DNA from: Macrostomum lignano
Taxonomy: Eukaryota
Length of the DNA stretch: 61,633 nt
Direction: 5' to 3'
NCBI GenBank assembly: GCA_002269645.1
Contig: NIVC01003183.1
Coordinates: 1 to 61,633, forward strand
A program made the position numbers and the translations under genes. Of the stretch, positions 7,480-52,791 are shown piece by piece (the first letter of the stretch is position 1; every line of letters begins with the position of its first letter). The notes under the pieces were generated by a model. It saw only the letters and a list, made by a program, of their open reading frames with translations. It had not been told where the DNA came from and did not search any database.

Positions 7480-10322
7480 TCAATGCTTCTGACTGTTAAC
7501 AATCTTGCGCAGATTTGCGCCAGGCGGAGTGTTCCACACGGCGCTGCTGCTCCTTGGCGCCTTCTCAGCGGCCGCTGGGAACACCAGCTTCATTGTGGCT
7601 GCCAGGTCCAAGGTCTCAACTGGTTTGAACACCGACCACCAATGCGGACCGCGGAGGGTCTGCTTAGCGAAGAAGCGGTGCTTATGGTTGCCCTGCACCC
7701 AGCGAGGCAGCGCGTGCCGCGGCGCGTCCTCGTTATCGGTCTCGGCGTCCGAGTTCAGATCGTCAAGCGGATAGGTCTGCGGCGACGAGCGCGGCGGCGG
7801 GATCAGCTTCTTCTCGTAGGCGGTGGTTGGCACAAACGGCTGCGACACTTTCAGCGCCTCCGACTGCTTCTTCCAGGCTAGCTGGGACTCGCGCTCCTCA
7901 GCTTGCACTGCCGCTACCGCTTCCTCCGCCGCTTTGCGTCTGCGCTCGGCCTCCTCGGCCGCCGCCTTACGCTGCCGTTCCGCTTCCTCCTCTTTCGCTT
8001 TCCGATTTCGTTCAGCTTCTTCAGCTGCTTTTTTCTTTGCCTCTTCAGCAGCAGCCAACCGCTTCCGCTCTGCTTCTTCAGCCGCTCTTTTTCGTTCCGC
8101 TTCTTCCTCTGCCAATTTTCGTGCCGCCGATTGCTTGCGATCCGCCTCCTGCTTTTCGGCCAACTTTCTGCGCTCCTCCTCTTCAGCCGCTTTCCTTTCG
8201 CGCTCCGCCTCCTCATTTTTGCGCCGCTGTTCCTCCTGCTTTTTCTGCACTTCCTCGGCTTTGCGCTTCTCCTCGGCCTTGCGGTGCTCCTCCTCAGCTC
8301 GGCGCTTGCGCTCCGTCTCTTCGCGTCGTTTGGCCTCGGCCTGCAGAGTCTGCGCCACCCGGCCAGTCAGTTCAGTCTGCGCCAACTTCTGCGCAGACCT
8401 AGCCTGAACCTCCTGCTGACGCTTCTGCGCATTCTCCAGAACGCGTTTGCGCTTCTCCTCCTTGTCGCGAGCCTTCTGCGCGCGCAGCTCTTCGGCTTTC
8501 TCGCGGCGCTTGCGCAGGCGCTCCTCTTCGGCGCGCTCCTTCTCTTCTAGGAGGCGCCGGCGCTGTCGCTCCTCTGCGGCATCGTCAGAGGCGCGCGATA
8601 CGGCCGCTCCGCCGCCAGCATCGTGCGGCACCCGAGAGCGCGTCTTGCTACCCTGCGCCTTGCTGGTGGAGGCGGTGCCATACCGACCAGACGATTGCGG
8701 AGCCCCGGCGCCTCCGCTACACTGACCGGCGACCGGGGTGCGGCCAACAGCGGCGGCAGCGCAGCCATCGTCAACAGACATTAGAGAGACATTGGGGTCC
8801 ACTAGCTGGCAGCTGACATCCTCTGTCATGTACGACGAGCCGGCTGCTGCCTCCCTATTGACTGCCGGAGTTGAAATCGACGCCTTCTTGGCGCCTTTTG
8901 GCGACGAGGCGGCTGCAGCGGCGGCGCCGACAAAATGCGGAGCGACCAGTGGCGCGTGAAACTGACGTGATACGGCCGTGGCAGCCGGGGTCATGCAGGC
9001 CGGGGCCCGGTAAGGAGCTGCGCCGGCGGTGCGCTGCTTCTTTTTTTCAGCCTCGGCTGTGCCAACGATGCCGCGGGTGAACGGCGAGGCGGCCACGGGA
9101 GAGCGAAGCCGCTTTTTGGACGACTCGGCAACTGGAAGGGGGAGAGGAGATGTGGAATGAAAGAAAGATGGCTACTCACCCACTCTACCACTACCACAGC
9201 AGTCAGCACTGAAGCTACTCACCCACTCTACAACAGCAGCCAGTCAGCACTAAAGCTACTCACCCACTCTACAACAGCAGCCAGTCAGCACTAAAGCTAC
9301 TCACCCACTCTACAACAGCAGCCAGTCAGCACTAAAGCTACTCACCCACTCTACAACAGCAGCCAGTCAGCACTGAAGCTACTCACCCACTGAACCCCAG
9401 CAGGCAGTCAGCACTGAAGCTACTCACCCACTCTACAACAGCAGCCAGTCAGCACTGAAGCTACTCACCCACTCTACAACAGCAGCCAGTCAGCACTGAA
9501 GCTACTCACCCACTGAACCCCAGCAGGCAGTCAGCACTGAAGCTACTCACCCACTCTACAACAGCAGCCAGTCAGCACTGAAGCTACTCACCCACTGAAC
9601 CCCAGCAGGCAGTCAGCACTAAAGCTACTCACCCACTCTACAACAGCAGCCAGTCAGCACTGAAGCTACTCACCCACTCTACAACAGCAGCCAGTCAGCA
9701 CTAAAGCTACTCACCCACTCTACAACAGCAGCCAGTCAGCACTGAAGCTACTCACCCACTCTACAACAGCAGCCAGTCAGCACTGAAGCTACTCACCCAC
9801 TCTGCCAGCGGCGGCCGGCCGTCCCCTAGCAGACGTGCTATTAGTAGAAATAGCAGCTGACGCAGCCGCGGCCGCCGCTCGCCCGGTGCGGGTGCTGCGA
9901 GCCGGAGCAGCGGAGGCGGCCGCGACAGCCCGAGTACGCGTGGTCCTGGCGCCAGCGCCAGTAGTGTTAGACGCCGCATTGGCGCCATTAATAGGACTAC
10001 GCGAGCGCCGTTTTGAACTGGCCTGAACGCCGAGCATTTCAACGCTAAGCGGGCCATAAATATCGTCAGCCCCAATAGTAGCCGTGGTCGCTGTTGACAA
10101 GTTCGAAGCGGCAGTGGCGCCGATTCGCTTAGCTTTTTTCTTGGGCTTCGGAGTCTTAGTGGGCAGGGGATTCAAGTTGCGACCCTCAACGAGGCCGGGC
10201 ATCCGTTCAAATGCCTGCTCCAGGAAGGCCAACTGCTCGCTATAGAGCTTCTCCGTGGCCTCCTCGGCCTTCAGACGCCAGCGGAGAAGTCCCAGACCGG
10301 GAAATGTAGGGCAGTTGGCCAT
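7480..10322 (-). CDS. INCENP: Inner centromere protein (chromosomal passenger complex); exons 10322-9797 and 9131-7480, ~725 aa
   Basis: C-terminal IN-box (ETDNED..LPRW...LDL...RSSSAVWNTPP), long E/R/K single-alpha-helix region, helical N-terminus; phase-1 intron GTGAGT...cttccag joins frames. Confidence 0.93.
9165..9802. repeat. 41-bp minisatellite (~16 units, two variants) filling INCENP intron 1
   Basis: Unit CAGCACTGAAGCTACTCACCCACTCTACAACAGCAGCCAGT; variant ...CCCACTGAACCCCAGCAGGCAGT. Confidence 0.95.
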
Positions 10323-24374: not shown

Positions 24375-25742
24375 ATGTACTTCGTTCGCGCTTACGATCA
24401 CGAGGATCATCGGTATCGAACTGACTATCGCGGTCAAACGGTGGTTCCAAGTTTCACTCTTGAATGTCAGGAAGATCACAGCTGTTACTTGGAAGGCTGT
24501 CAAAGAGTTGTAATCAACGTGTCAGGTGAAGTATTTGAGACGCAGTTAAAAACGCTCAATCGTTATCCGAACACTCTGCTTGGCAATGAGGCGAAACGCC
24601 TGGCCTATTGGGATCGCGCTCGATGTCATTTCTTTTTCGACCGTCATCGACTCTCGTTTCCCGCCATATTGAACTTCTACCAGACTGGCGGAAAGCTGCG
24701 CAAGCCGCACGAAGTGCCAGAGGAAATCTTCTACGATGAATTGAAATTCTTTGAAATTGACGAAAGCGTCATCCGCGACTTTTTGCTAACAGAAGGCTAC
24801 ACAATGCAAACTGTGCGCACAGTTGCGCAACCGAATTGGCGCACTCGGCTTTACTCAGCGTTTGAATATCCAGATTCTTCGTTACTTGCTAGAACGGTAG
24901 CAATGTTTAATGTGGCTGTTATTGCTCTAAGCATAGCGCTATTCTGCTTAGAAACTCTGCCAGCTAAATCTTCTCAAAGGTGTCCAACCCTCGTATCTGC
25001 CAAGCAACAGGGCCAATATCAGACTTTGGTTGCACCAGTGCCAACAACTACCCCAATTCAGAGTTCGCAGCCGTCGAAAACCTATGGATTTAATTGGTTC
25101 TTCATCTTAGAGATGCTCTGCGTACTGTGGTTCAGTTTTGAGTTCGCCATGCGACTATTAACATATCCTTTTCCTCGAAAAGCGTTTATGCTTTCCTTAG
25201 CGAATTGGCTCGATTTGGCCAGTATATTGCCGTTTATAGGATCCACAATAATCCTGAACTTCACTGTGGACTGCTATGACCAGTGCCAGAAGGGCTCCAT
25301 ATTTCTCAATCTGCTTCGCTTTCTAAGAGTGTTTCGGATATTCAAGTTTTATAAATACGTCACTGGAATGCAAATTCTTGCTCGCACTCTTCGCATGAGT
25401 TTTCGCGAGATGACAATGTTTATATTATTTTTAACCATATGCATAGTACTATTCGCCACGGCAATTTACTTTGCTGAAACTGGTAACGACCGTCTGCAGT
25501 TCAACAGCATACCTGACTCATTCTGGTGGGCCATCATCAGCATGTGTACAGTCGGCTATGGCGACTATGTTCCGCGTAGTCTACCAGGAAAGCTTGTTGG
25601 CAGCATCTGTGTAGTGGCTGGCGTGATGACTATTGCCCTGCCAGTGCCGGTTATTGTCACAAACTTTAACATAGTGTATCGTCAAACACTACAGAAGCGA
25701 TTTCGGCCAGAGCTGACTAGGGAGAAGCAGATACCGGTGTAG
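24375..25742 (+). CDS. Intronless voltage-gated K+ channel, Shaker/Kv1-like, 455 aa
   Basis: T1 domain (RVVINVSG..FETQLKTL..YP.TLLG...FFDRHR..F.AIL.FYQTGG.L), S1-S6, S4 LRFLRVFRIFK, filter TVGYGD, S6 PVP. Confidence 0.96.
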   Translation: MYFVRAYDHEDHRYRTDYRGQTVVPSFTLECQEDHSCYLEGCQRVVINVSGEVFETQLKTLNRYPNTLLGNEAKRLAYWDRARCHFFFDRHRLSFPAILNFYQTGGKLRKPHEVPEEIFYDELKFFEIDESVIRDFLLTEGYTMQTVRTVAQPNWRTRLYSAFEYPDSSLLARTVAMFNVAVIALSIALFCLETLPAKSSQRCPTLVSAKQQGQYQTLVAPVPTTTPIQSSQPSKTYGFNWFFILEMLCVLWFSFEFAMRLLTYPFPRKAFMLSLANWLDLASILPFIGSTIILNFTVDCYDQCQKGSIFLNLLRFLRVFRIFKFYKYVTGMQILARTLRMSFREMTMFILFLTICIVLFATAIYFAETGNDRLQFNSIPDSFWWAIISMCTVGYGDYVPRSLPGKLVGSICVVAGVMTIALPVPVIVTNFNIVYRQTLQKRFRPELTREKQIPV

Positions 25743-30619: not shown

Positions 30620-30965
30620 AGAGAATCATACTAAACCCTTTGAGTCGCTTTAAACTCTCTAGAATCCACCCTGAACCACTTTGAGAATAACCCTAAACCC
30701 CTTGAGAATCACCCTAAACCCCTTGAGAATCATTCTAAACCCCTTGAGAATCACCATAAATTCTTTGAGAATCATCCTAAACGCCTTTGGTAATCCCCTA
30801 AACCCCTCGAGAATCGCCCTAAATCTCTTGAGATTACCCTTTGAGAATCGCCCTAAACCCCTTGAGATTACCCTTTGAGAATCATTCTAAACCCCTTGAG
30901 AATCACCCTAAACCCCTCGAGAATCTCCATAAACACTTTGAGAATCACCCTAAACCATTTGAGGA
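30620..30965. repeat. 21-bp minisatellite with CCCTAA core
   Basis: GAGAATCACCCTAAACCCCTT units; shares GAGAATCRCCC..TAA with the SPCS2 intron 2 array. Confidence 0.9.
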
Positions 30966-31736
30966 TCACCCTATTGTTGAAAAATTTTGGTTTGGTTTTG
31001 AACAATGCAAAATTATGTCTCTTATTCACAGCTAGCAAGATTAAGATTATAATTACGAATGCAGCTGTGAAATGCGCATATATAGCTAAACTATCAATAT
31101 AAGGCAGCCTGCATTTCCGTCGTCTTCATTTTTTTAGCCTGCCCATAGTTTTTAATTATTCAAATAGCGGCTAGATTACAGCCAGCATCATTGCCTTGCC
31201 GCATTATTGCCGATTTACTACCTTCATATGAAAGCAGATGGGACTAGATTGCTTGGAGACTAGGGTAACAAATTTTACAGTAAGATAAGCTATCATATAA
31301 TTTTTGTCCGAGTTCCTGCTGGTTTTTCATCTGGGCGACTCAATCTGTTATTAACTTCCATTTGAAGTTTTTACATTGTTAAAAGGAGCTGAGAGTATCG
31401 AATGCATGTGTTTTTCAATATCGGAGAGTTTTATCGAATACTGTGAACTGGTTAACCTCTGACTGGAAAATCTGTGAAAACTCAGAGTTGCTATGTGAGG
31501 ACATGGGGCAAGTATAAGAGTTTCGAGAGTCCATGATTGCAATGCAGCAGTCAGTAGTCAGACACTGGAGCTTCCAGTCCAGATAGTTTAGGAGTCCTTG
31601 ATTGAAATTCAGCAGCCAGTAGCCAGACACTGGAGCTTCCAGTCCAGATAGTTCAGGGGTCCATGATTGCAATGCAGCAACGATTAGTCAGGCGCAAAGC
31701 ACACAATCGCACAAATTCACTTCAGCGTGACCAGTA

Positions 31737-32579
31737 ATGACGCGGCACTCCCGCAACAACACATCGCACAGTGTGTACACTTACCACGAGAAGCGTCGCG
31801 ACGCCCAGGCCTCAGAGTACGGCACTAAGGAGGTCCGAGTCGGTCGGGACAGCGTCAAAAAATTCGACTGCTGCTGCCTGACTAATCAGCCGTGCAAAGA
31901 TCCGGTGGTGACGCCCCAGGGCTACCTGTACGACCGCGAGGCCATCCTGCAGTACATGCTGCAGCAGAGGCAGGAGCTGGTTAAGCAGGCCAAAGCGCGC
32001 GAACGCCAGCTGGCGGCCGAGGCGGCGCGCCAGGCGCAGGAACAGAGCAAGCAAGAGCACGAGACTGAGGTTAGCAAATACCTGAGCGCTAATACCGTGG
32101 CCAGCAGTCCGGATAAGAAGAAATCCGGCAGCGCCGAGCAGCCGGTCACGGCCTCCAACTTTTGGATACCCTCGGCCACGCCGTCCTCTTCTTCGGCGTC
32201 GTCCTCATCGACGGCGGCAAAGCCGGCACCGGCCCGACCGGACGACAAGGTCCGCTGTCCGATGTCTAAGAAGCCCCTGAGGCTGAAGGATCTGATTTCC
32301 ATTCAATTTAAGCCCGCGCCCGGCGGCGGCTACCTGTGCGCCCTGACTGGCGATGTGTTGAACGATTCCACTCCGTTGTGCGTCATCCGGCCGTCCGGCT
32401 GCGTGGTCACCAAGGAGGCCGTCGACAAGCTGGTGCGGCCCGAGATGCGCGATCCGATCAGCGGGCGCGAGCTGACCCAGGCTGACATTGTGCAGCTGCA
32501 GAGGGGCGCTAGCGGCTTCGCTGGCAGCGGGCACAACCTGCTGTCTAAGCACACTGGCGTGGTTATGCATGTTGCTTGA
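31737..32579 (+). CDS. NOSIP: Nitric oxide synthase-interacting protein (U-box/RING-like), intronless, 280 aa
   Basis: MTRHSRNNT...VYTYHEK...YGT...R.G.DSVK.FDCCCL...PC..PVVTP.GYLYDREAIL.Y; C-terminal CPMS.KPLRLKDL, LQRGASGFA. Confidence 0.97.
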   Translation: MTRHSRNNTSHSVYTYHEKRRDAQASEYGTKEVRVGRDSVKKFDCCCLTNQPCKDPVVTPQGYLYDREAILQYMLQQRQELVKQAKARERQLAAEAARQAQEQSKQEHETEVSKYLSANTVASSPDKKKSGSAEQPVTASNFWIPSATPSSSSASSSSTAAKPAPARPDDKVRCPMSKKPLRLKDLISIQFKPAPGGGYLCALTGDVLNDSTPLCVIRPSGCVVTKEAVDKLVRPEMRDPISGRELTQADIVQLQRGASGFAGSGHNLLSKHTGVVMHVA

Positions 32580-32694
32580 CTAATACTCTGCTGCGCTTAA
32601 CTGGCTTGCATTGTGGATTCCGGCTCCTCTCATCCTTAATCTGGGACTTTGTGTTGTTTAATGTAATGCTAATCTAAGCCGGACTCTGAGAATG

Positions 32695-32835
32695 ATCCTA
32701 AGACCGACTCTAAGGCTGACCTATAGACTGACTATAAGACTGACTTCAAGGCTGACCTATAGACTGACTATAAGACTGACTTCAAGGCTGACCTTTAGAC
32801 CGACTCTATGACTGACTCTAAGGCAGACCCTAAGG
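32695..32835. repeat. 12-bp-based tandem repeat downstream of NOSIP
   Basis: AAGGCTGACCTA/TAGACTGACTAT/AAGACTGACTTC units. Confidence 0.8.
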
Positions 32836-33118
32836 CTGGGTTACGAGTACTATCAGGATGGGTGTTGTTAAGGCAACCCAGAATTTCAATTAACTTGCGA
32901 TTGTCAACAGTTTGTATATGAATGGTATTATAATCTCTGTACAATTAAATTTTAAATACACTTGCAATTGACGGCAAATCCCATTTACTAAACATTTTAC
33001 TACGCAGTAAAATAAAAAAATTATTTATTTTGGCATTGTGGCCACATTTGACTGCCTAGTATCTGTAATTGCACACCTGTGCCAACCATTGTCAGTAAAA
33101 CTGCCAACCAAACCGCAG

Positions 33119-34444
33119 GCGCTAACGGTATTCGGTCTGACTGCTCTGGAGTTGGCGCTGTGCTTAGCCGGCTGCCTCTGTCGGCTGGCTCTGCGCGCCT
33201 GGCTAACGCCGCAGTCCGTGCGCGCCTGGTCAAGCTCACCTGTGGAGTCCTGGACAGCCGTGCGCGAGTACCTGGCCCTCCGTCGGGCCGGCGTCGATCC
33301 GTACGACGGCAGCGCGTTGCACTTGCCGCCGCTGTCGCTCCGGCTGATGCTGGCCGCCGACAGTCTGCTTGGCGGCGGCGACGGCGACCGAGCCTGGCTG
33401 GTGCTGCTCGCCCTGGAGCTAGCCGGCTGTCTAGCGCTCAAACGGTTGCTGCGCGAATTCGGCGCTTACACCCTGCGCCGACAGGCGGCCAACGTTGCCA
33501 GCTATTGCTCCGCCAGCGTCCCCATGCTGCTGTCCGGGGACAGCCTGCGCCGACTGCGGCTTCCCGTCATTGCCGCCTACTGGTTCAATCCCTACAGTCT
33601 GGTGGCCTCAGTTGCCGAGGCAACCACGCCGCTTAGTAACCTGGTTGTCCTGCTCTGCCTAGCCGAGCTGTGCCGCGGTCGGGTCGGCTTCGCCGCCGCC
33701 TTGTGCGCGGCCGCCGCCTATCACGGCCTGTACCCGCTGTGCCTGATTGTGCCCATCTGCCTGGCCGGCCCGGCCCGGCCCGCCCTGCTGGCCTTTGCTG
33801 GCACGCTGGCCTGCCTGCTGGCAGCTTCCTACATGCTGACTGGCGGCAGCTGGGCCTACCTGCAGTCTGTGTACGCCTTTCACGCTCTGGCGCCGGATCA
33901 CACGCCCGGCTTCAGCCTGTCCTGGTACCTATTCTGCGAGGCGTTCGATCATTTTCGCAGCCTATTCCAGGCTGTGTTCCAGGCCAATCTGGTGTGCGTA
34001 CTGGCCCCGCTGGCTATCAGATTCCGCTCCGATCCCTGCTTCCTAGCCGTGATCTGCTGGGCCTACACGGCTATATTCAAGCCCTACTGCTGCGTGTCTG
34101 AGCAGGCCCTGATAGCCTGTGTGTTCATCATGCACGCTCAGCTGCATGCTCACATGCGCCGAGCTCTGCTAGCTATCATACTACTAATAGTAGCATTTGT
34201 ACTGGCGCCAATCATGCACCATCTGTGGCTGTATCCGGGCAGTGCAAATTCCAATTTCTACTTTGCCATCTCGCTGTTGCACTGCACAGCTATGGCCCTG
34301 CTGCTGTATCTATTCTGCATTGCCTATTTGAAACGGGAATTCCTACTGCATCACGGGCCCCAGCCGTTGAAGTTTAGCGACGGCACCGAGGCTAAAATTG
34401 TGCTGCAGGCGCCAACAGTAAAACTGCTGTTTGTCAACAATTGA
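33119..34444 (+). CDS. PIGU: GPI transamidase subunit PIG-U; single exon, no genomic ATG ahead of the conserved N-terminal motifs
   Basis: SSPVESW..VRE...GVDPYDG..H.PPL, WFNPY, P..SLSWYLF.E.FDHF..LF, IFKPY, HLWLYPGSANSNFYFAI; multi-TM; start placed at acceptor ccgcag|GCG. Confidence 0.93.
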   Translation, partial: ALTVFGLTALELALCLAGCLCRLALRAWLTPQSVRAWSSSPVESWTAVREYLALRRAGVDPYDGSALHLPPLSLRLMLAADSLLGGGDGDRAWLVLLALELAGCLALKRLLREFGAYTLRRQAANVASYCSASVPMLLSGDSLRRLRLPVIAAYWFNPYSLVASVAEATTPLSNLVVLLCLAELCRGRVGFAAALCAAAAYHGLYPLCLIVPICLAGPARPALLAFAGTLACLLAASYMLTGGSWAYLQSVYAFHALAPDHTPGFSLSWYLFCEAFDHFRSLFQAVFQANLVCVLAPLAIRFRSDPCFLAVICWAYTAIFKPYCCVSEQALIACVFIMHAQLHAHMRRALLAIILLIVAFVLAPIMHHLWLYPGSANSNFYFAISLLHCTAMALLLYLFCIAYLKREFLLHHGPQPLKFSDGTEAKIVLQAPTVKLLFVNN

Positions 34445-34817
34445 ATTCATTTTTCAGTCAAGTCTGCACTGTTAGCTACTGTATCCAATTTGTAGCCAAA
34501 TTCTTAGTTTCGCTGGAATGTCTGTTTCTCATGCTCTGTTACAACGCTAATTTCGTTTCTTGTTTAGTAATTTTCTCTCTACTGCTTATCCTGTGCATTC
34601 TTTTGTAGTGTCGCTTGAAAGCTGTCTGTCTGTCTGTCTTTATTTGTTATCTTTGCATTATTCTCTGTTTTATATTAGCTGCCATATTCACTGTTCCATA
34701 ATTGTTCCTCTTGGAAATGCATTGTTACACTATTCAAATAAATATACAGCAACTAGTACAAGTTCATGCCTTTCTTGTCTCTTTGTGTTGCTCTTTTCTT
34801 TACTGAAAAGGTTTCGC

Positions 34818-36607
34818 ATCTAACCTTCCAGTCTCTCAGTTCTACATGCATCTAACCCTCCAGTCTCTCAGTTCGACATGCATCTAACCTACCAGTCTCT
34901 CAGTTGTACATGCATCTAACCTTCCAGTCTCTCAGTTCTACATGCACCTAACCTTCCAGTCTCTCAGTTGTACATGCATCTAACCTTCCAGTCTCTCAGT
35001 TGTACATGCACCTAACCTTCCAGTCTCTCAGTTGTACATGCACCTAACCTTCCAGTCTCTCAGTTGTACATGCATCTAACCTTCCAGTCTCTCAGTTGTA
35101 CATGCATCTAACCTTCCAGTCTCTCAGTTGTACATGCATCTAACCTACCAGTCTCTCAGTTGTACATGCATCTAACCTACCAGTCTCTCAGTTGTACATG
35201 CATCTAACCCTCCAGTCTCTCAGTTGTACATGCATCTAACCTACCAGTCTCTCAGTTCTACATGCATCTAACCTACCAGTCTCTCAGTTGTACATGCATC
35301 TAACCTTCCAGTCTCTCAGTTGTACATGCATCTAACCCTCCAGTCTCTCAGTTCGACATGCATCTAACCCTCCAGTCTCTCAGTTCTACATGCATCTAAC
35401 CTACCAGTCTCTCAGTTGTACATGCATCTAACCCTCCAGTCTCTCAGTTCTACATGCATTTAGCCTTCCACTCTCTCAGTTGTACAGTCATCTAACCTAA
35501 CCCTCCAGTCTCTCAGTTCTACATGCATCTAACCTTCCAGTCTCTCAGTTCTACATGCATCTAACCTTCCAGTCTCTCAGTTGTACAGTCATCTAACCTA
35601 CCAGTCTCTCAGTTCTACATGCATCAAACCTACCAGTCTCTCAGTTGTACATGCATCTAACCTACCAGTCTCTCAGTTCTACATGCATCTAACCTTCCAG
35701 TCTCTCAGTTCTACATGCATCTAACCTTCCAGTCTCTCAGTTGTACATGCACCTAACCTTCCAGTCTCTCAGTTGTACATGCATCTAACCTACCAGTCTC
35801 TCAGTTGTACATGCATCTAACCTACCAGTCTCTCAGTTGTACATGCATCTAACCCTCCAGTCTCTCAGTTGTACATGCATCTAACCTACCAGTCTCTCAG
35901 TTCTACATGCATCTAACCTACCAGTCTCTCAGTTGTACATGCATCTAACCTTCCAGTCTCTCAGTTGTACATGCATCTAACCCTCCAGTCTCTCAGTTCG
36001 ACATGCATCTAACCCTCCAGTCTCTCAGTTCTACATGCATCTAACCTACCAGTCTCTCAGTTGTACATGCATCTAACCTACCAGTCTCTCAGTTCTACAT
36101 GCATCTAACCTACCAGTCTCTCAGTTCTACATGCATCTAACCTACCAGTCTCTCAGTTGTACATGCATCTAACCCTCCAGTCTCTCAGTTCTACATGCAT
36201 TTAGCCTTCCACTCTCTCAGTTGTACAGTCATCTAACCTAACCCTCCAGTCTCTCAGTTCTACATGCATCTAACCTTCCAGTCTCTCAGTTCTACATGCA
36301 TCTAACCTTCCAGTCTCTCAGTTGTACAGTCATCTAACCTACCAGTCTCTCAGTTCTACATGCATCAAACCTACCAGTCTCTCAGTTGTACATGCATCTA
36401 ACCTACCAGTCTCTCAGTTCTACATGCATCTAACCTTCCAGTCTCTCAGTTCTACATGCATTTAACCTTCCAGTCTCTCAGTTGTACAGTCATCTAACCT
36501 ACCAGTCTCTCAGTTCTACATGCATCTAACCTACCAGTCTCTCAGTTCTACATGCATCTAACCCTCCAGTCTCTCAGTTCTAAATGCATCTAACCCTCCA
36601 GTCTCTC
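34818..36607. repeat. 32-bp minisatellite between PIGU and FAAH2 (~55 units)
   Basis: Unit CATCTAACCTTCCAGTCTCTCAGTTGTACATG. Confidence 0.97.
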
Positions 36608-36683
36608 TATATTGCAATGCTATTAAAAGAAATCGCATGAAACTGTTTGCCAGTAGGTTAATCCGCTAATCCCCGCTGGTTGC

Positions 36684-39168
36684 ATGGCCAACCCATCTGC
36701 AGCCAGCCGCGACAGTCGCGTCGGTCTCAGCGACCGCCTGATTAGCATGGTGATGCGCGTTCTGCTTGGCACCATCCGCCCCCTGACCGGTATCTGCTTT
36801 GAAATTGTTTACCGACTGTTTGTGAAGCGTCGCCGAGTGCCGCCGCTGGAGAGCCCCCTGCTGGGCATGTCGGCCGTGGCCCTGGCTGACGCCATCAGGC
36901 GCCGCGAGGTCACCAGCGAGGCCGTGGTGCGCGCCTCCATTGACCGAATGCGTCTGGTCCATCCGATTATCAACGCCGTGGTGTGGGAGAGGTTAGCAAT
37001 ATCATATGCAATCTGATCTGTTATGAGCAGCTGGGCCAGGGCAGAAGTCTAAAGACGAAAAAAATAGGAAGGGATCATCTGGGTCAAATAAAGAAATGTC
37101 TGCTGGACACTGTTCAGGCAACTTTTAGCATTGGATGCTAAGTTAAATATCAGTCGACTGCCTAAAAGTCACTTTATCGGCAGTCTGTCTGTCTGCAGTC
37201 AGTATCGGCAGTCTGTTTGTCTGCAGTCAGTCTATCGGCAGTCTGTTTGTCTGCAGTCAGTCTATCGGCAGTCTGTTTGTCTGCAGTCAGTCTATCGGCA
37301 GTCTGGCTGTCTGCAGTCAGTCTATCGGCAGTCTGGCTATTGGCAGTCAGTCTATCGGCAGTCTGGCTGTCTGCAGTCAGTCTATCGGCAGTCTGGCTGT
37401 CTGCAGTCAGTCTGTCTGCAGTCTGTTTGTCTGCAGTCAGTCTATCGGCAGTCTGTTGGTCTGCAGTCAGTCTATCGGCAGTCTGTTTGTCTGCAGTCAG
37501 TCTATCGGCAGTCTGGCTATTGGCAGTCAGTCTATCGGCAGTCTGTTTGTCTGCAGTCAGTCTATCGGCAGTCTGGCTATTGGCAGTCAGTCTATCGGCA
37601 GTCTGACTATCTGCAGTCAGTCTGTCTGCAGTCTGTTTGTCTGCAGTCAGTCTATCTGCAGTCTGTCTGTCTGCAGTCAGTCTATCGGCAGTCTGTTTGT
37701 CTGCAGTCAGTCTATCTGCAGTCTGTCTGTCTGCAGTCAGTCTATCGGCAGTCTGTTTGTCTGCAGTCAGTCTATCGGCAGTCTGTCTGTCTGCAGTCAG
37801 TCTATCGGCAGTCTGTTTGTCTGCAGTCAGTCTATCGGCAGTCTGTCTGTCTGCAGTCAGTCTATCTGCAGTCTGTCTGTCTGCAGTCAGTCTATCGGCA
37901 GTCTGTTTGTCTGCAGTCAGTCTATCGGCAGTCTGTCTGTCTGCAGTCAGTCTATCGGCAGTCTGTTTGTCTGCAGTCAGTCTATCGGCAGTCTGTCTGT
38001 CTGCAGTCAGTCTATCGGCAGTCTGGCTATTGGCAGTCAGTCTATCGGCAGTCTGACTATCTGCAGTCAGTCTGTCTGCAGTCTGTTTGTCTGCAGTCAG
38101 TCTATCGGCAGTCTGTCTGTCTGCAGTCAGTCTATCGGCAGTCTGACTATCTGCAGTCAGTCTATCGGCAGTCTGTCTGTCTGCAGTCAGTCTATCGGCA
38201 GTCTGTTTGTCTGCAGTCAGTCTATCTGCAGTCAGTCTATCGGCAGTCTGGTAATTGCAGTCAGTCTGTCTGCAATCGGTCTATCGGCAGTCTGTCTGCC
38301 TGCAGTCAGTCCCAACACTGGCGGCCAGGCCAGGCCCAAAACGGCAACTATGTCCCCTTTCTCCCAGAAAGTAGTTTAACAATTATTACGTCATCATTTG
38401 TAAGGGCCGAATAGAACATGTATTCACGTATTTATTTCTGCAGGTACGAAGCGGCCCTGCAGGACGCCAGGCGAGTTGACGCTATGCTGGACTCCGACCC
38501 GGACAATCCCGAATGGAGCCGCGAGGCCAAGCCATTCCTGGGAGTGCCGGCCACCGTGAAGGAGGCCTTCGGCTTGGTTGGTGGCACCCAGTCTGTTGGC
38601 CTGTGGCTGCGCACCAGCATTCGCTCAGAGCGGGACGCCGTCTGCGTTGAACGAATGAAATCGGCCGGCTGCATCCCGCTGTGCCTCACCAACGTCAGCG
38701 AGCTGTGCATGTGGTGGGAGTCGCACAATCGGGTCAACGGCATCACTGGGAATCCCTACGATAGTAGGCGAATCGCCGGCGGCAGCAGCGGCGGCGAGGG
38801 CGCCAATGTGGGCGCCGGCTGCGCCCCGGTCGGCCTCGGCTCCGACATCGGCGGCAGCATCCGCATGCCGGCCTTCTTTAACGGCGTATTCGGCCACAAG
38901 GCCACCGCCTACATGATCCCCAACGCGGGCCAGTACCCCGATGCCATAGCCGAGGGCCGCTACTTCATGCTTAGCGGCCCAATTGTAAGCCACGCCGAGG
39001 ACCTGCTGCCCATGGTGCGCCTCATGGCCGGGCCCGAGAACTCCGCCCGGCTGCTCATCCGGCCGTCCGATCCCAGGCCGGACGTGAAACGGCTCAAGAT
39101 CTACTATATGGAAGGTGAGCAGGTGGCATCTGTGTCTGTCTGTCTGTTTGTCTGTCTGTCTCTGTTTT

Positions 39169-51749: not shown

Positions 51750-52791
51750 CGTTGCTATGGTTTTCTCATGAAGTCGCATTTAACGAGTTTTGAAAAAACG
51801 CAACGTGTATCTACATCGAAGAAGTAAATGAATTTAAATACCTGGGAATTATTTTTGAACCAAAAAACAGCTTTAAAAATGTATTGAACACCAAACTAAG
51901 CAGGGATATACAGCCATGTTTTCCCTACTCCATAGGGTAAAGAATACGTCCCTAGACATCACACTCATTCGCAGACTATTTGACGCGCTTGTTACCCCCG
52001 TTATCACTTACGGTTGTGAGCTCTGGGGCCCTCTGGCTACCATGTCTGATACAAAAGCTATTGATAATATTCAGCTGAAATTCTACAAATATCTCCTCAA
52101 TCTACCAAAATTTGCTAGCAACAGTGTGATATCATCAGAACTTGAGCTTACTCCAATCTCTCAACGAATCGCTAAAACCTACCTCATCTACTGGCTGAAG
52201 ATTAGACACAAAAAACTCTGCCAAACGACTCTAGAAATTTTCTACTCAAGCACCGGCCAAAAAAATCCATGGAAAATGAATGTACTAAAGAAACTAGAAA
52301 GTATAGACCTAAAAGCACTAACTGAAGATAAACTTTCCCAAAGCTTTAATAGCGAGAAATACCTAGTGAAAAAGCACCTCAAGATACACAGAGAAAGAGA
52401 ACTTAGCCAAAAGCTAGAGAATCAGCAACATATTAAACTCTACAAAAACGCCTATCTCTACAAAAAAATCTGCAGGCCCGACCTTTCAGATTACTTCCCA
52501 TGTACATTTAGAAACAAAAAATTCTTAACAACCCTCCTAAAACTGAAATGCGAGATTACACCCAACTTTTTTTCTCAAGAACCATGTAAATTGTGTGGAG
52601 CGCGAAATGGTTCTGAAATTCTACACTACTTGACCGAATGTCCACAAACTGAAGAGATCAGGAAAAAATACTTCTGTCAATACCTCTTAAATAGCAATCA
52701 AATACACAAGATAGGATATGCTACAAATGAAAAAAGAGTCAGAAAAGAACTCACTGGTGTAGCTAAAATATATGAAGTCATGAATAGCTAA
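51750..52791 (+). mobile_element. 5'-truncated non-LTR retrotransposon (end of RT, thumb and CCHC knuckle), frameshifted
   Basis: EEVNEFKYLGI (RT domain 7) at ~51818 in a different frame from ORF 51916..52791, which has YGCELWG and CKLCGARNGSEILHYLTECP. Confidence 0.85.

What the first reader, a model, noticed from the sequence alone, without database searches (positions are those of the whole stretch)
33008..33349. PIGU has no genomic start codon; an in-frame acceptor would take the AUG of a spliced leader
Seen: an in-frame stop at 33008-33010 and no ATG in any frame from 33119 until 33347. That ATG lies downstream of conserved PIG-U N-terminal motifs (SSPVESW, GVDPYDG). The track's 'M' at 33038 is GTG. 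The acceptor aaaccgcag| (33118) sits exactly on a codon boundary. Established: flatworm spliced leaders end in AUG, which can initiate translation. Inference: SL-AUG plus GCG CTA ACG gives MALTVFGLTALELALCL.., a normal PIG-U hydrophobic N-terminus, so expression of this GPI-pathway gene would depend on trans-splicing.
Basis: partly seen in the sequence, partly recalled or inferred. Interest (0 to 1): 0.82.

Follow-up and report, generated by a model that had tools for sequence, protein, structure and literature searches.

The report
Flatworm PIGU borrows spliced-leader start codon
In the flatworm Macrostomum lignano the GPI-transamidase gene PIGU has no start codon of its own and almost certainly takes its AUG from the trans-spliced leader, a mechanism already established in flatworms, so this is a correct but ordinary finding.

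Summary
The window is the whole M. lignano contig NIVC01003183.1. It holds a single-exon PIG-U ORF (33119-34444, Pfam 8e-77). That ORF is closed upstream by TAA 33008, and its first ATG is at 33347, downstream of conserved N-terminal motifs. A CAG| acceptor ends at 33118, on a codon boundary.

- The published 35-nt M. lignano SL ends in ATG.
- All three near-identical genomic copies keep the acceptor and lack an ATG.
- GenBank calls all three CDSs without an initial Met. One of them (PAA76974.1, named 'partial') starts exactly at the acceptor.
- In that copy NOSIP and PIGU are genes g3 and g4 of one RNA-seq-assembled transcriptional unit. [quoted passage not shown]
- AATAAA lies about 100 nt upstream of the acceptor, which is typical operon spacing.
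- With the SL Met, the N-terminus has the usual PIG-U length.

I saw no read-level proof. An alternative in-frame acceptor (33152) and an ATG|GT micro-exon (32922) are not excluded.

SL-AUG initiation has been established in flatworms since 2006 and has been noted for Macrostomum. This is a new member of a known kind, of low interest.

Side finding: SL-tail sequences sit at neighbouring gene junctions. They are probably artefacts of polishing the assembly with RNA-seq.

The parts
31720..32579 (+). Upstream cistron NOSIP (zf-NOSIP/U-box protein). Includes acceptor cttcag| at 31720-31725, ATG at 31737 and stop at 32577-32579.
   Evidence: ORF and Pfam zf-NOSIP 1.2e-33. The orthologous copy PAA76973.1 is Mlig016610g3, the same transcriptional-unit prefix as PIGU g4. 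The annotated 5' end lies 5 nt after the acceptor.
32673..32838 (.). 12/36-nt tandem repeat in the NOSIP 3' region / NOSIP-PIGU spacer. Copy number varies among the three genomic copies.
   Evidence: TRF; 36-nt unit indels in the alignment.
32922..32930 (+). ATG|GTATTA, the only candidate cis micro-exon donor that would give the same protein (rival).
   Evidence: Conserved in all three copies. It departs from the published donor motif GT[G/A]AG and lies upstream of both poly(A)-like signals of NOSIP.
33008..33010 (+). In-frame TAA that closes the PIGU frame upstream.
33011..33016 (+). AATAAA, the likely poly(A) signal of NOSIP, 102 nt before the PIGU acceptor.
   Evidence: Besides ATTAAA at 32944, it is the only canonical signal between the NOSIP stop and PIGU. 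The spacing fits the ~100-bp mode of M. lignano operons (PMC8629364). The poly(A) role is inferred.
33038..33040 (+). In-frame GTG (the bacterial-code 'M' of the ORF track), not a plausible eukaryotic start.
   Evidence: The region 33038-33118 has GC3 of 0.44 against 0.75 in the CDS.
33107..33118 (+). Proposed SL trans-splice acceptor accaaaccgCAG|, with the AG at 33117-33118 ending on a codon boundary.
   Evidence: Identical in all three copies. The annotated CDS of PAA76974.1 begins at the next base.
33119..34444 (+). PIGU single coding exon: 441 genomic codons plus TGA. With the SL AUG it encodes a 442-aa protein, MALTVFGLTALELALCLAG...
   Evidence: Pfam PIG-U 8.4e-77. Human PIGU structures 8imx/7wld match at 1e-51. 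7 of 8 differences between copies are synonymous.
33146..33151 (+). Alternative in-frame acceptor ctggAG| (exon would start at 33152, giving MLALCLAG..., 431 aa).
   Evidence: The annotated CDS of the third copy (P0007, 429 aa) begins 3 nt after the equivalent site.
33347..33349 (+). First genomic in-frame ATG. It lies 76 codons into the ORF, downstream of TM1 and the conserved SSPVESW / GVDPYDG motifs.

Best explanation
PIGU is a downstream cistron of a same-strand gene cluster (SPC25 - NOSIP - PIGU - amidase) in Macrostomum lignano.

Proposed mechanism:
1. NOSIP and PIGU are transcribed together.
2. The NOSIP mRNA is cleaved and polyadenylated shortly after AATAAA 33011.
3. The PIGU mRNA is made by trans-splicing the 35-nt spliced leader onto the CAG| acceptor at 33118/33119.
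4. The leader ends in AUG and the acceptor sits on a codon boundary. The leader therefore supplies both the cap and the initiator codon, and translation gives MALTVFGL... (442 aa), a full-length PIG-U with a normal hydrophobic first helix.
5. The genome itself encodes no usable start codon in any of the three homeologous copies.

Shown here: the sequence anatomy, conservation in three copies, the status of the annotation, and membership of the same transcriptional unit.

Inferred: the exact junction, the poly(A) site, and ribosomal use of the SL AUG.
For: 1. The frame is closed at 33008 and has no ATG until 33347. PIG-U homology and three synonymous-only differences between copies lie upstream of that ATG.
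2. GC rises from 0.39-0.48 to 0.68, and GC3 from 0.36-0.44 to 0.75, at 33119.
3. Among the AG sites between 33008 and 33150, only 33119 gives a long ORF when ATG is placed in front of it. The others give 1-3 codons.
4. The acceptor and the lack of an ATG are identical in three genomic copies.
5. All three annotated CDSs lack an initial Met. PAA76974.1, named 'partial' by GenBank, starts exactly at the acceptor, and the window copy starts 3 nt later. The annotation pipeline cut RNA-seq transcriptional units using SL-read peaks and poly(A) signals (PMC5730564).
6. NOSIP is Mlig016610g3 and PIGU is Mlig016610g4, i.e. one transcriptional unit.
7. The SL ends in ATG. The flatworm SL AUG is an established initiator (Cheng et al. 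2006, cited) and is noted as a 'translation start codon' for Macrostomum (PMC10468722).
8. With the SL Met there are 40 residues before the SPxxSW motif. Four other PIG-U proteins have 26-41. The alignment to the human PIGU PDB chain starts at query residue 11 against chain residue 12.
9. No other PIGU paralogue with its own ATG turned up for this species.
Against: - I could not inspect any SL-containing read or transcript. The support from the annotation is second-hand.
- The annotated 5' ends differ among the copies (33119, 33122 and 33155 equivalents), so the junction is not pinned to the nucleotide.
- The acceptor has no pyrimidine tract and matches the published [T/C]TNCAG motif only partly (CCGCAG).
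- ATG|GTATTA at 32922 is conserved and would give the identical protein by cis-splicing.
- The neighbouring amidase model also begins at a site that is not an AG acceptor. Model 5' ends are therefore not always true junctions.
- Initiation at the SL AUG has been shown in Schistosoma, not in M. lignano.
Confidence: 0.78

Rival explanations
1. The SL is trans-spliced mainly or additionally at the next in-frame acceptor ctggAG| (exon from 33152). This would give MLALCLAGCLCRLALRAW..., 431 aa, still using the SL AUG.
For: The site is in frame. The annotated CDS of the third copy (429 aa, ALCLAG...) starts 3 nt after this site, just as the window copy's CDS starts 3 nt after the 33119 site. It would leave 29 residues before SPxxSW, still within the 26-41 range of other PIG-U proteins.
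Against: GAG is a weaker acceptor than CAG. The GC/GC3 jump is at 33119, not 33152. Two of three models start at or next to 33119. The first helix would lose 11 hydrophobic residues.
Confidence: 0.08
2. A conventional capped mRNA starts in the NOSIP-PIGU spacer. A micro-exon ending ...ATG|GTATTA (32922-32924) is cis-spliced to 33119 and supplies a genomic start codon.
For: ATG followed by GT at 32922-32926 is present in all three copies and is in phase 0 with the acceptor. The 194-nt would-be intron contains no ATG.
Against: The donor GTATTA lacks the AG of the published GT[G/A]AG motif. The site lies upstream of both poly(A)-like signals of NOSIP, i.e. probably inside the NOSIP 3' UTR. None of the three RNA-seq-based gene models contains such an exon, and all three CDSs lack an initial Met. 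PIGU shares a transcriptional unit with NOSIP.
Confidence: 0.06
3. Translation starts on genomic sequence without splicing. It starts either at the near-cognate GTG 33038 (A at -3, G at +4), giving a 27-aa extension, or at ATG 33347, giving a protein truncated by 76 residues.
For: The frame is open from 33011. The GTG has a good Kozak-like context. ATG 33347 is the first genomic ATG.
Against: 33038-33118 is compositionally non-coding (GC3 0.44 against 0.75). The single difference between copies in that stretch would be non-synonymous. A GTG start would put 67 residues before SPxxSW, outside the 26-41 range. Starting at 33347 removes TM1 and the most conserved luminal motifs, which show only synonymous change.
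Confidence: 0.04
4. The locus is a decaying or unexpressed copy that has lost its start codon.
For: There is no genomic ATG, and the annotated CDSs lack an initial Met.
Against: The 441-codon frame is intact in three copies, with 7 synonymous differences against 1 non-synonymous. Transcript-based gene models exist for all three. No other PIGU was found in the species.
Confidence: 0.02

Closest known systems
Schistosoma mansoni mRNAs that require the SL 3'-terminal AUG as initiator methionine (Cheng, Cohen, Ndegwa & Davis, J Biol Chem 2006;281:733, as cited in PMC9851317, PMC12582326 and PMC7653826)
   Same: The flatworm SL ends in AUG. The acceptor is in frame with the ORF. There is no genomic start codon upstream of conserved coding sequence.
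   Different: Different species (a free-living macrostomid) and a different gene (PIGU). Here the use of the SL AUG is inferred, not demonstrated by translation assays.
M. lignano SL trans-splicing and operons (Wudarski et al. 2017, PMC5730564; Ustyantsev & Berezikov 2021, PMC8629364)
   Same: The same single 35-nt SL. Genes are cut out of polycistronic transcriptional units. Intercistronic spacing is about 100 bp after repeats are subtracted. Conserved housekeeping genes are enriched among trans-spliced genes.
   Different: In the passages I searched, those papers describe prevalence, motifs and operons. I found no mention of genes that depend on the SL AUG, nor of PIGU in particular.
Macrostomum cliftonense / M. 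hystrix annotation (Wiberg et al. 2023, PMC10468722)
   Same: States explicitly that the Macrostomum SL probably contains the final ATG as a translation start codon, and treats this as an annotation issue.
   Different: The statement is general; no gene-level case is described in the text found.
slORFs: ORFs created by start codons in spliced leaders (slORFfinder, PMC9851317)
   Same: The concept that the SL supplies the start codon of an ORF absent from genome annotation.
   Different: That study covers nematodes, Oikopleura and trypanosomes, mostly with non-AUG NUG codons. Here a canonical AUG starts the main conserved ORF.
PIG-U / Gab1 subunit of GPI transamidase (Pfam PF06728; human structures 7wld, 8imx, 7w72; yeast 9ub7)
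   Same: Full-length match and collinear N-terminus. The conserved SPxxSW and G(V/I)xPYxG motifs are present.
   Different: The orthologues compared here begin with a methionine, whereas the M. lignano gene encodes none.

Membership tests
SL-AUG-initiated trans-spliced mRNA (Cheng et al. 2006 class) | The organism's spliced leader ends in AUG. | tested here: met
   Organism identified as M. lignano. The published SL is CGGTCTCTTACTGCGAAGACTCAATTTATTGCATG (PMC8629364).
SL-AUG-initiated trans-spliced mRNA (Cheng et al. 2006 class) | An AG acceptor sits on a codon boundary, so the SL AUG is in frame with the main ORF and no stop intervenes. | tested here: met
   CAG| ends at 33118. ATG placed before 33119 gives a 442-aa ORF.
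SL-AUG-initiated trans-spliced mRNA (Cheng et al. 2006 class) | No genomic in-frame AUG is available upstream of conserved coding sequence. | tested here: met
   TAA at 33008, first ATG at 33347. Conserved motifs and synonymous-only change lie upstream of it. The same holds in three copies.
SL-AUG-initiated trans-spliced mRNA (Cheng et al. 2006 class) | The mature mRNA actually carries the SL at that junction. | tested here: inconclusive
   Only indirect evidence. The CDS models lack an initial Met and start 0-3 nt from an AG acceptor, and the transcriptional unit is shared with NOSIP. The pipeline is described. No reads or transcripts were accessible, and no transcript-derived protein is in the collection.
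SL-AUG-initiated trans-spliced mRNA (Cheng et al. 2006 class) | Ribosomes initiate at the SL AUG. | not testable with these tools
   Needs ribosome profiling, N-terminal proteomics or a reporter assay.
PIG-U (PF06728), GPI transamidase subunit | Full-length match to the family profile above the curated threshold. | tested here: met
   259 bits against a cut-off of 24.5, profile positions 6-377 of 378. Human PIGU chains match at 1e-51.
Downstream gene of a flatworm operon | Same strand as the upstream gene, short intercistronic distance, downstream gene trans-spliced. | tested here: met
   The NOSIP stop at 32579 is 539 nt from the acceptor at 33118, below the 1-kb criterion. The spacer includes a 166-nt tandem repeat. 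AATAAA lies 102 nt before the acceptor. The trans-splicing part is indirect, as above.
Downstream gene of a flatworm operon | Both genes lie on one precursor transcript. | tested here: met
   PAA76973.1 is Mlig016610g3 (NOSIP) and PAA76974.1 is Mlig016610g4 (PIGU), adjacent on one contig. Naming convention: genes gN belong to one RNA-seq-assembled transcriptional unit. This is second-hand evidence from the annotation.

The most novel reading that the evidence does not exclude
The loss of the start codon is fixed in all three homeologous PIGU copies, and there is no back-up gene. GPI-anchor attachment in this animal would then depend on trans-splicing.

The CAG acceptor occupies the slot where Met1 is expected. 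This fits a simple evolutionary route: ATG -> AAG/CAG destroys the start codon and creates an in-phase acceptor in one step.

The SL tails found at the 5' junctions of NOSIP (one copy) and the amidase would then be real RNA-templated conversions rather than polishing artefacts. Such conversions could write a start codon back into the genome, so that start codons cycle between SL-donated and genome-encoded states.
Probability: 0.1. Interest if true: 0.6.

Novelty: new member of a known kind. Interest (0 to 1): 0.25.

Why it matters
- **Annotation.** The CDS that GenBank labels 'partial' is probably a complete protein once the SL Met is added. The same is likely true of many of the roughly 30-39% of M. 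lignano genes that are trans-spliced.
- **Experiments.** PIGU transgenes, rescue constructs or heterologous expression need an added ATG. Promoter-reporter designs must take into account that PIGU has no promoter of its own and is driven from upstream of NOSIP.
- **Biology.** This is one more essential housekeeping pathway (GPI anchoring) whose expression depends on trans-splicing. That was already expected from work on Schistosoma.
- **Assembly quality.** The side observation is a practical warning. The assembly was polished with RNA-seq, so SL tails, including false genomic ATGs, can be written in front of trans-splice sites.

Tried and rejected
- **SL RNA gene or full SL copy in the window.** None found with up to 3 mismatches. 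A gapped local-alignment scan of the SL against the window and the loci gave nothing above shuffled controls. I therefore do not count the SL-like stretch I thought I saw before the SPC25 ATG.
- **Direct transcript evidence.** The protein collection holds only the three genome-derived PIGU proteins for this species and no transcript-derived fragments. Supplementary tables of the two M. lignano papers hold nothing on Mlig016610 or PIGU.
- **Transcriptional-unit name of the amidase.** The homology search returned only an older UniProt entry, not a name. That entry did show that an independent model also starts at ANPSAAS without M.
- **Splice-site matrix from the window's own introns.** Only two or three introns could be placed, so I used the published motifs instead.
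- **Scans of metagenome, bacterial-genome and viral collections for the SL-PIGU junction.** Not run, because those collections cannot contain flatworm transcripts.
- **Structure prediction.** Not run, because family membership is already unambiguous.
- **Assembly error as the cause of the missing ATG.** Rejected. Three contigs agree, and the documented polishing bias would add ATGs at such junctions rather than remove them.

Full report
**Identity of the window.** The PIGU protein called on this contig is found only in the Macrostomum lignano assembly GCA_002269645.1. The window is the complete contig NIVC01003183.1, 61,633 bp. Two further contigs carry copies that are near-identical over the stretches compared: NIVC01000774.1 (locus L001) and NIVC01001558.1 (L002). 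They show the same gene order, NOSIP - PIGU - amidase; SPC25 lies upstream in the window and L002. This fits the known hidden polyploidy of the species (PMC10468722).

**The observation.**
- TAA 33008-33010 is in frame, and GTG is at 33038.
- 'aaaccgcag' ends at 33118, on a codon boundary.
- A single open frame runs from 33119 to TGA 34442-34444 (441 codons).
- The first in-frame ATG is at 33347. No ATG occurs in any frame from 32925 to 33346.
- ATG|GTATTA is at 32922.

The translation is an unambiguous PIG-U. The Pfam PF06728 match is 8.4e-77 and covers profile positions 6-377 of 378. Human PIGU cryo-EM chains match at about 1e-51.

**Why the start must come from elsewhere.** The stretch 33119-33346 is coding:
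- It aligns to the first helix and to the conserved SPxxSW / GVxPYxG loop of human PIGU.
- GC jumps from 0.39-0.48 to 0.68, and GC3 from 0.36-0.44 to 0.75, at 33119.
- The three substitutions that distinguish the genomic copies in this stretch are all synonymous. Over the whole CDS the count is 7 synonymous to 1 non-synonymous.

The frame is closed at 33008 and holds no ATG before 33347. The initiator must therefore come from a spliced-on sequence or from a non-AUG codon. Among the AG dinucleotides between 33008 and 33150, only the one ending at 33118 yields a long ORF when ATG is placed in front of it. The others give 1-3 codons. A second in-frame AG, with the exon starting at 33152, lies 33 nt further in.

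**Evidence that the SL supplies the start.**
- M. lignano has a single 35-nt spliced leader, CGGTCTCTTACTGCGAAGACTCAATTTATTGCATG, found on 30-39% of its genes (PMC8629364; PMC5730564).
- The GenBank gene models come from RNA-seq transcriptional units. The TBONE pipeline 'cut' these into genes using peaks of SL-trimmed reads and poly(A) signals, and ORFs were then called with TransDecoder.
- In that annotation all three PIGU CDSs lack an initial Met, and GenBank names PAA76974.1 (Mlig016610g4) 'partial'. PAA76974.1 begins ALTVFG..., exactly at the acceptor. The window copy begins one codon later (LTVFG...). The third copy begins at ALCLAG..., one codon after the alternative acceptor.
- No model has an upstream exon.
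- The adjacent NOSIP gene on the same contig is PAA76973.1, Mlig016610g3. By the authors' naming convention, genes gN belong to one assembled transcriptional unit. NOSIP and PIGU were therefore seen on one precursor RNA.
- AATAAA at 33011 is 102 nt upstream of the acceptor. This matches the ~100-bp mode of intercistronic distance in M. lignano operons.
- With the SL Met, the protein has 40 residues before SPxxSW, against 26-41 in four other PIG-U proteins. Its first 19-25 residues form a strongly hydrophobic helix.
- The alignment to the human PDB chain begins at query residue 11 against chain residue 12. I could not verify whether that construct carries extra N-terminal residues, so I claim collinearity only to within a few residues.

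**What is known.** Flatworm SLs end in AUG. Cheng et al. (J Biol Chem 2006) showed that this AUG serves as initiator methionine and that more than 40 S. mansoni cDNAs require it (as summarised in PMC9851317). [quoted passage not shown] The mechanism is therefore established. This is one more gene that uses it, in a species where I found no gene-level case described.

**Rivals.**
- *SL addition at 33152.* This would still use the SL AUG and cannot be excluded. It may coexist with the main junction.
- *Cis micro-exon ATG|GTATTA at 32922.* It is conserved in all copies and would give the same protein. However, the donor is poor relative to GT[G/A]AG, it lies upstream of both candidate NOSIP poly(A) signals, and it is absent from all three RNA-seq-based models.
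- *GTG 33038 or ATG 33347 as start.* Composition, N-terminal length and conservation all contradict these.
- *Pseudogene.* Contradicted by the intact frame under purifying selection in three copies and by the absence of any other PIGU.

**Limits.** I saw no reads. The annotated 5' ends scatter by a few nucleotides. In the neighbouring amidase the model starts at a site that is not an AG acceptor. Model ends are good evidence but not infallible.

**Side finding.** The bases immediately upstream of two neighbouring genes' annotated 5' junctions equal the 3' tail of the SL.
- *Amidase.* In the window it is preceded by ggTTGCATG|GCCAAC (36680-36686). The other two copies have ggTCTCATG|. The 535-aa models at all three loci begin at GCC, directly after that ATG, and an older independent UniProt entry also begins ANPSAAS... 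without M.
- *NOSIP.* The window and L002 have ttcaCTTCAG|CGTGACC. L001 has ttcaTGCATG|CGTGACC, which is five adjacent substitutions in an otherwise identical 160 nt.
- *Likely cause.* The assembly was polished with Pilon using RNA-seq as well as genomic reads (PMC5730564 Methods). The simplest explanation is that SL-bearing reads overwrote the acceptor with the SL tail.
- *Consequences if so.* The 'genomic' ATG of the amidase would be spurious, and that gene would be a second SL-AUG-dependent cistron in this cluster. It also means the missing ATG of PIGU cannot be a polishing error, because the bias runs the other way. A real RNA-templated conversion is the less likely alternative.

**Verdict.** It is a new member of a known kind, of low interest to specialists. 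It is useful mainly for annotation and construct design.

Noticed in passing
window 36680-36689 (and L001 8618-8629, L002 8711-8722): The amidase (FAAH2-like) CDS is annotated as starting at GCC 36687, directly after a genomic ATG. An older UniProt model also starts ANPSAAS without M. The 7 nt before it in the window (TTGCATG) equal the SL 3' tail, while the other two copies have TCTCATG. There is no AG acceptor. The assembly was Pilon-polished with RNA-seq, so the ATG may be an SL-read artefact and the amidase a second SL-AUG-dependent gene.
   Followed up: partly
L001 4640-4656 versus window 31714-31730 and L002: At the NOSIP 5' junction one genomic copy has TGCATG (the SL tail) exactly where the other two have the acceptor CTTCAG. 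That is five adjacent substitutions in an otherwise identical 160 nt. It is either an RNA-seq polishing artefact or an RNA-templated conversion that removes the acceptor.
   Followed up: partly
window 31726-31739: If the SL is added at cttcag|CGTGACCAGTAATG, its AUG opens a 4-codon uORF (AUG CGU GAC CAG UAA). The uORF's stop overlaps the NOSIP start codon (UAAUG), which is a termination-reinitiation arrangement. The NOSIP models in the window and L002 start 5 nt after this acceptor.
   Followed up: no
window 32925-33118: The AT-rich spacer upstream of the PIGU acceptor has no ATG in any frame. Shuffles give a mean of 4.4, and only 0.2% of dinucleotide shuffles have none. I have no functional reason for this if the region is discarded as outron/3' UTR. 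The interval was chosen after the fact.
   Followed up: partly
window 34816-36607, 37167-38311, 32673-32838, 30621-30973: Large tandem arrays lie between and inside the genes. A 32-nt unit repeated 56 times fills most of the PIGU-amidase spacer. A 30-nt unit repeated 38 times lies in amidase intron 1. A 12/36-nt array in the NOSIP-PIGU spacer differs in copy number among the three genomic copies. This fits the published remark that repeats inflate operon spacers.
   Followed up: partly
window 24375-25742 (+): An intronless ORF encodes a voltage-gated K+ channel (BTB_2/T1 plus Ion_trans domains). It has its own ATG and lies about 200 nt upstream of SPC25 on the same strand.
   Followed up: partly
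window 7480-9096 (-) and 51916-52791 (+): A GC-rich 538-codon ORF has a weak INCENP ARK-binding match. A 291-aa ORF has no Pfam hit, and its sequence looks to me like the C-terminal part of a retroelement reverse transcriptase (from memory, not tested).
   Followed up: no
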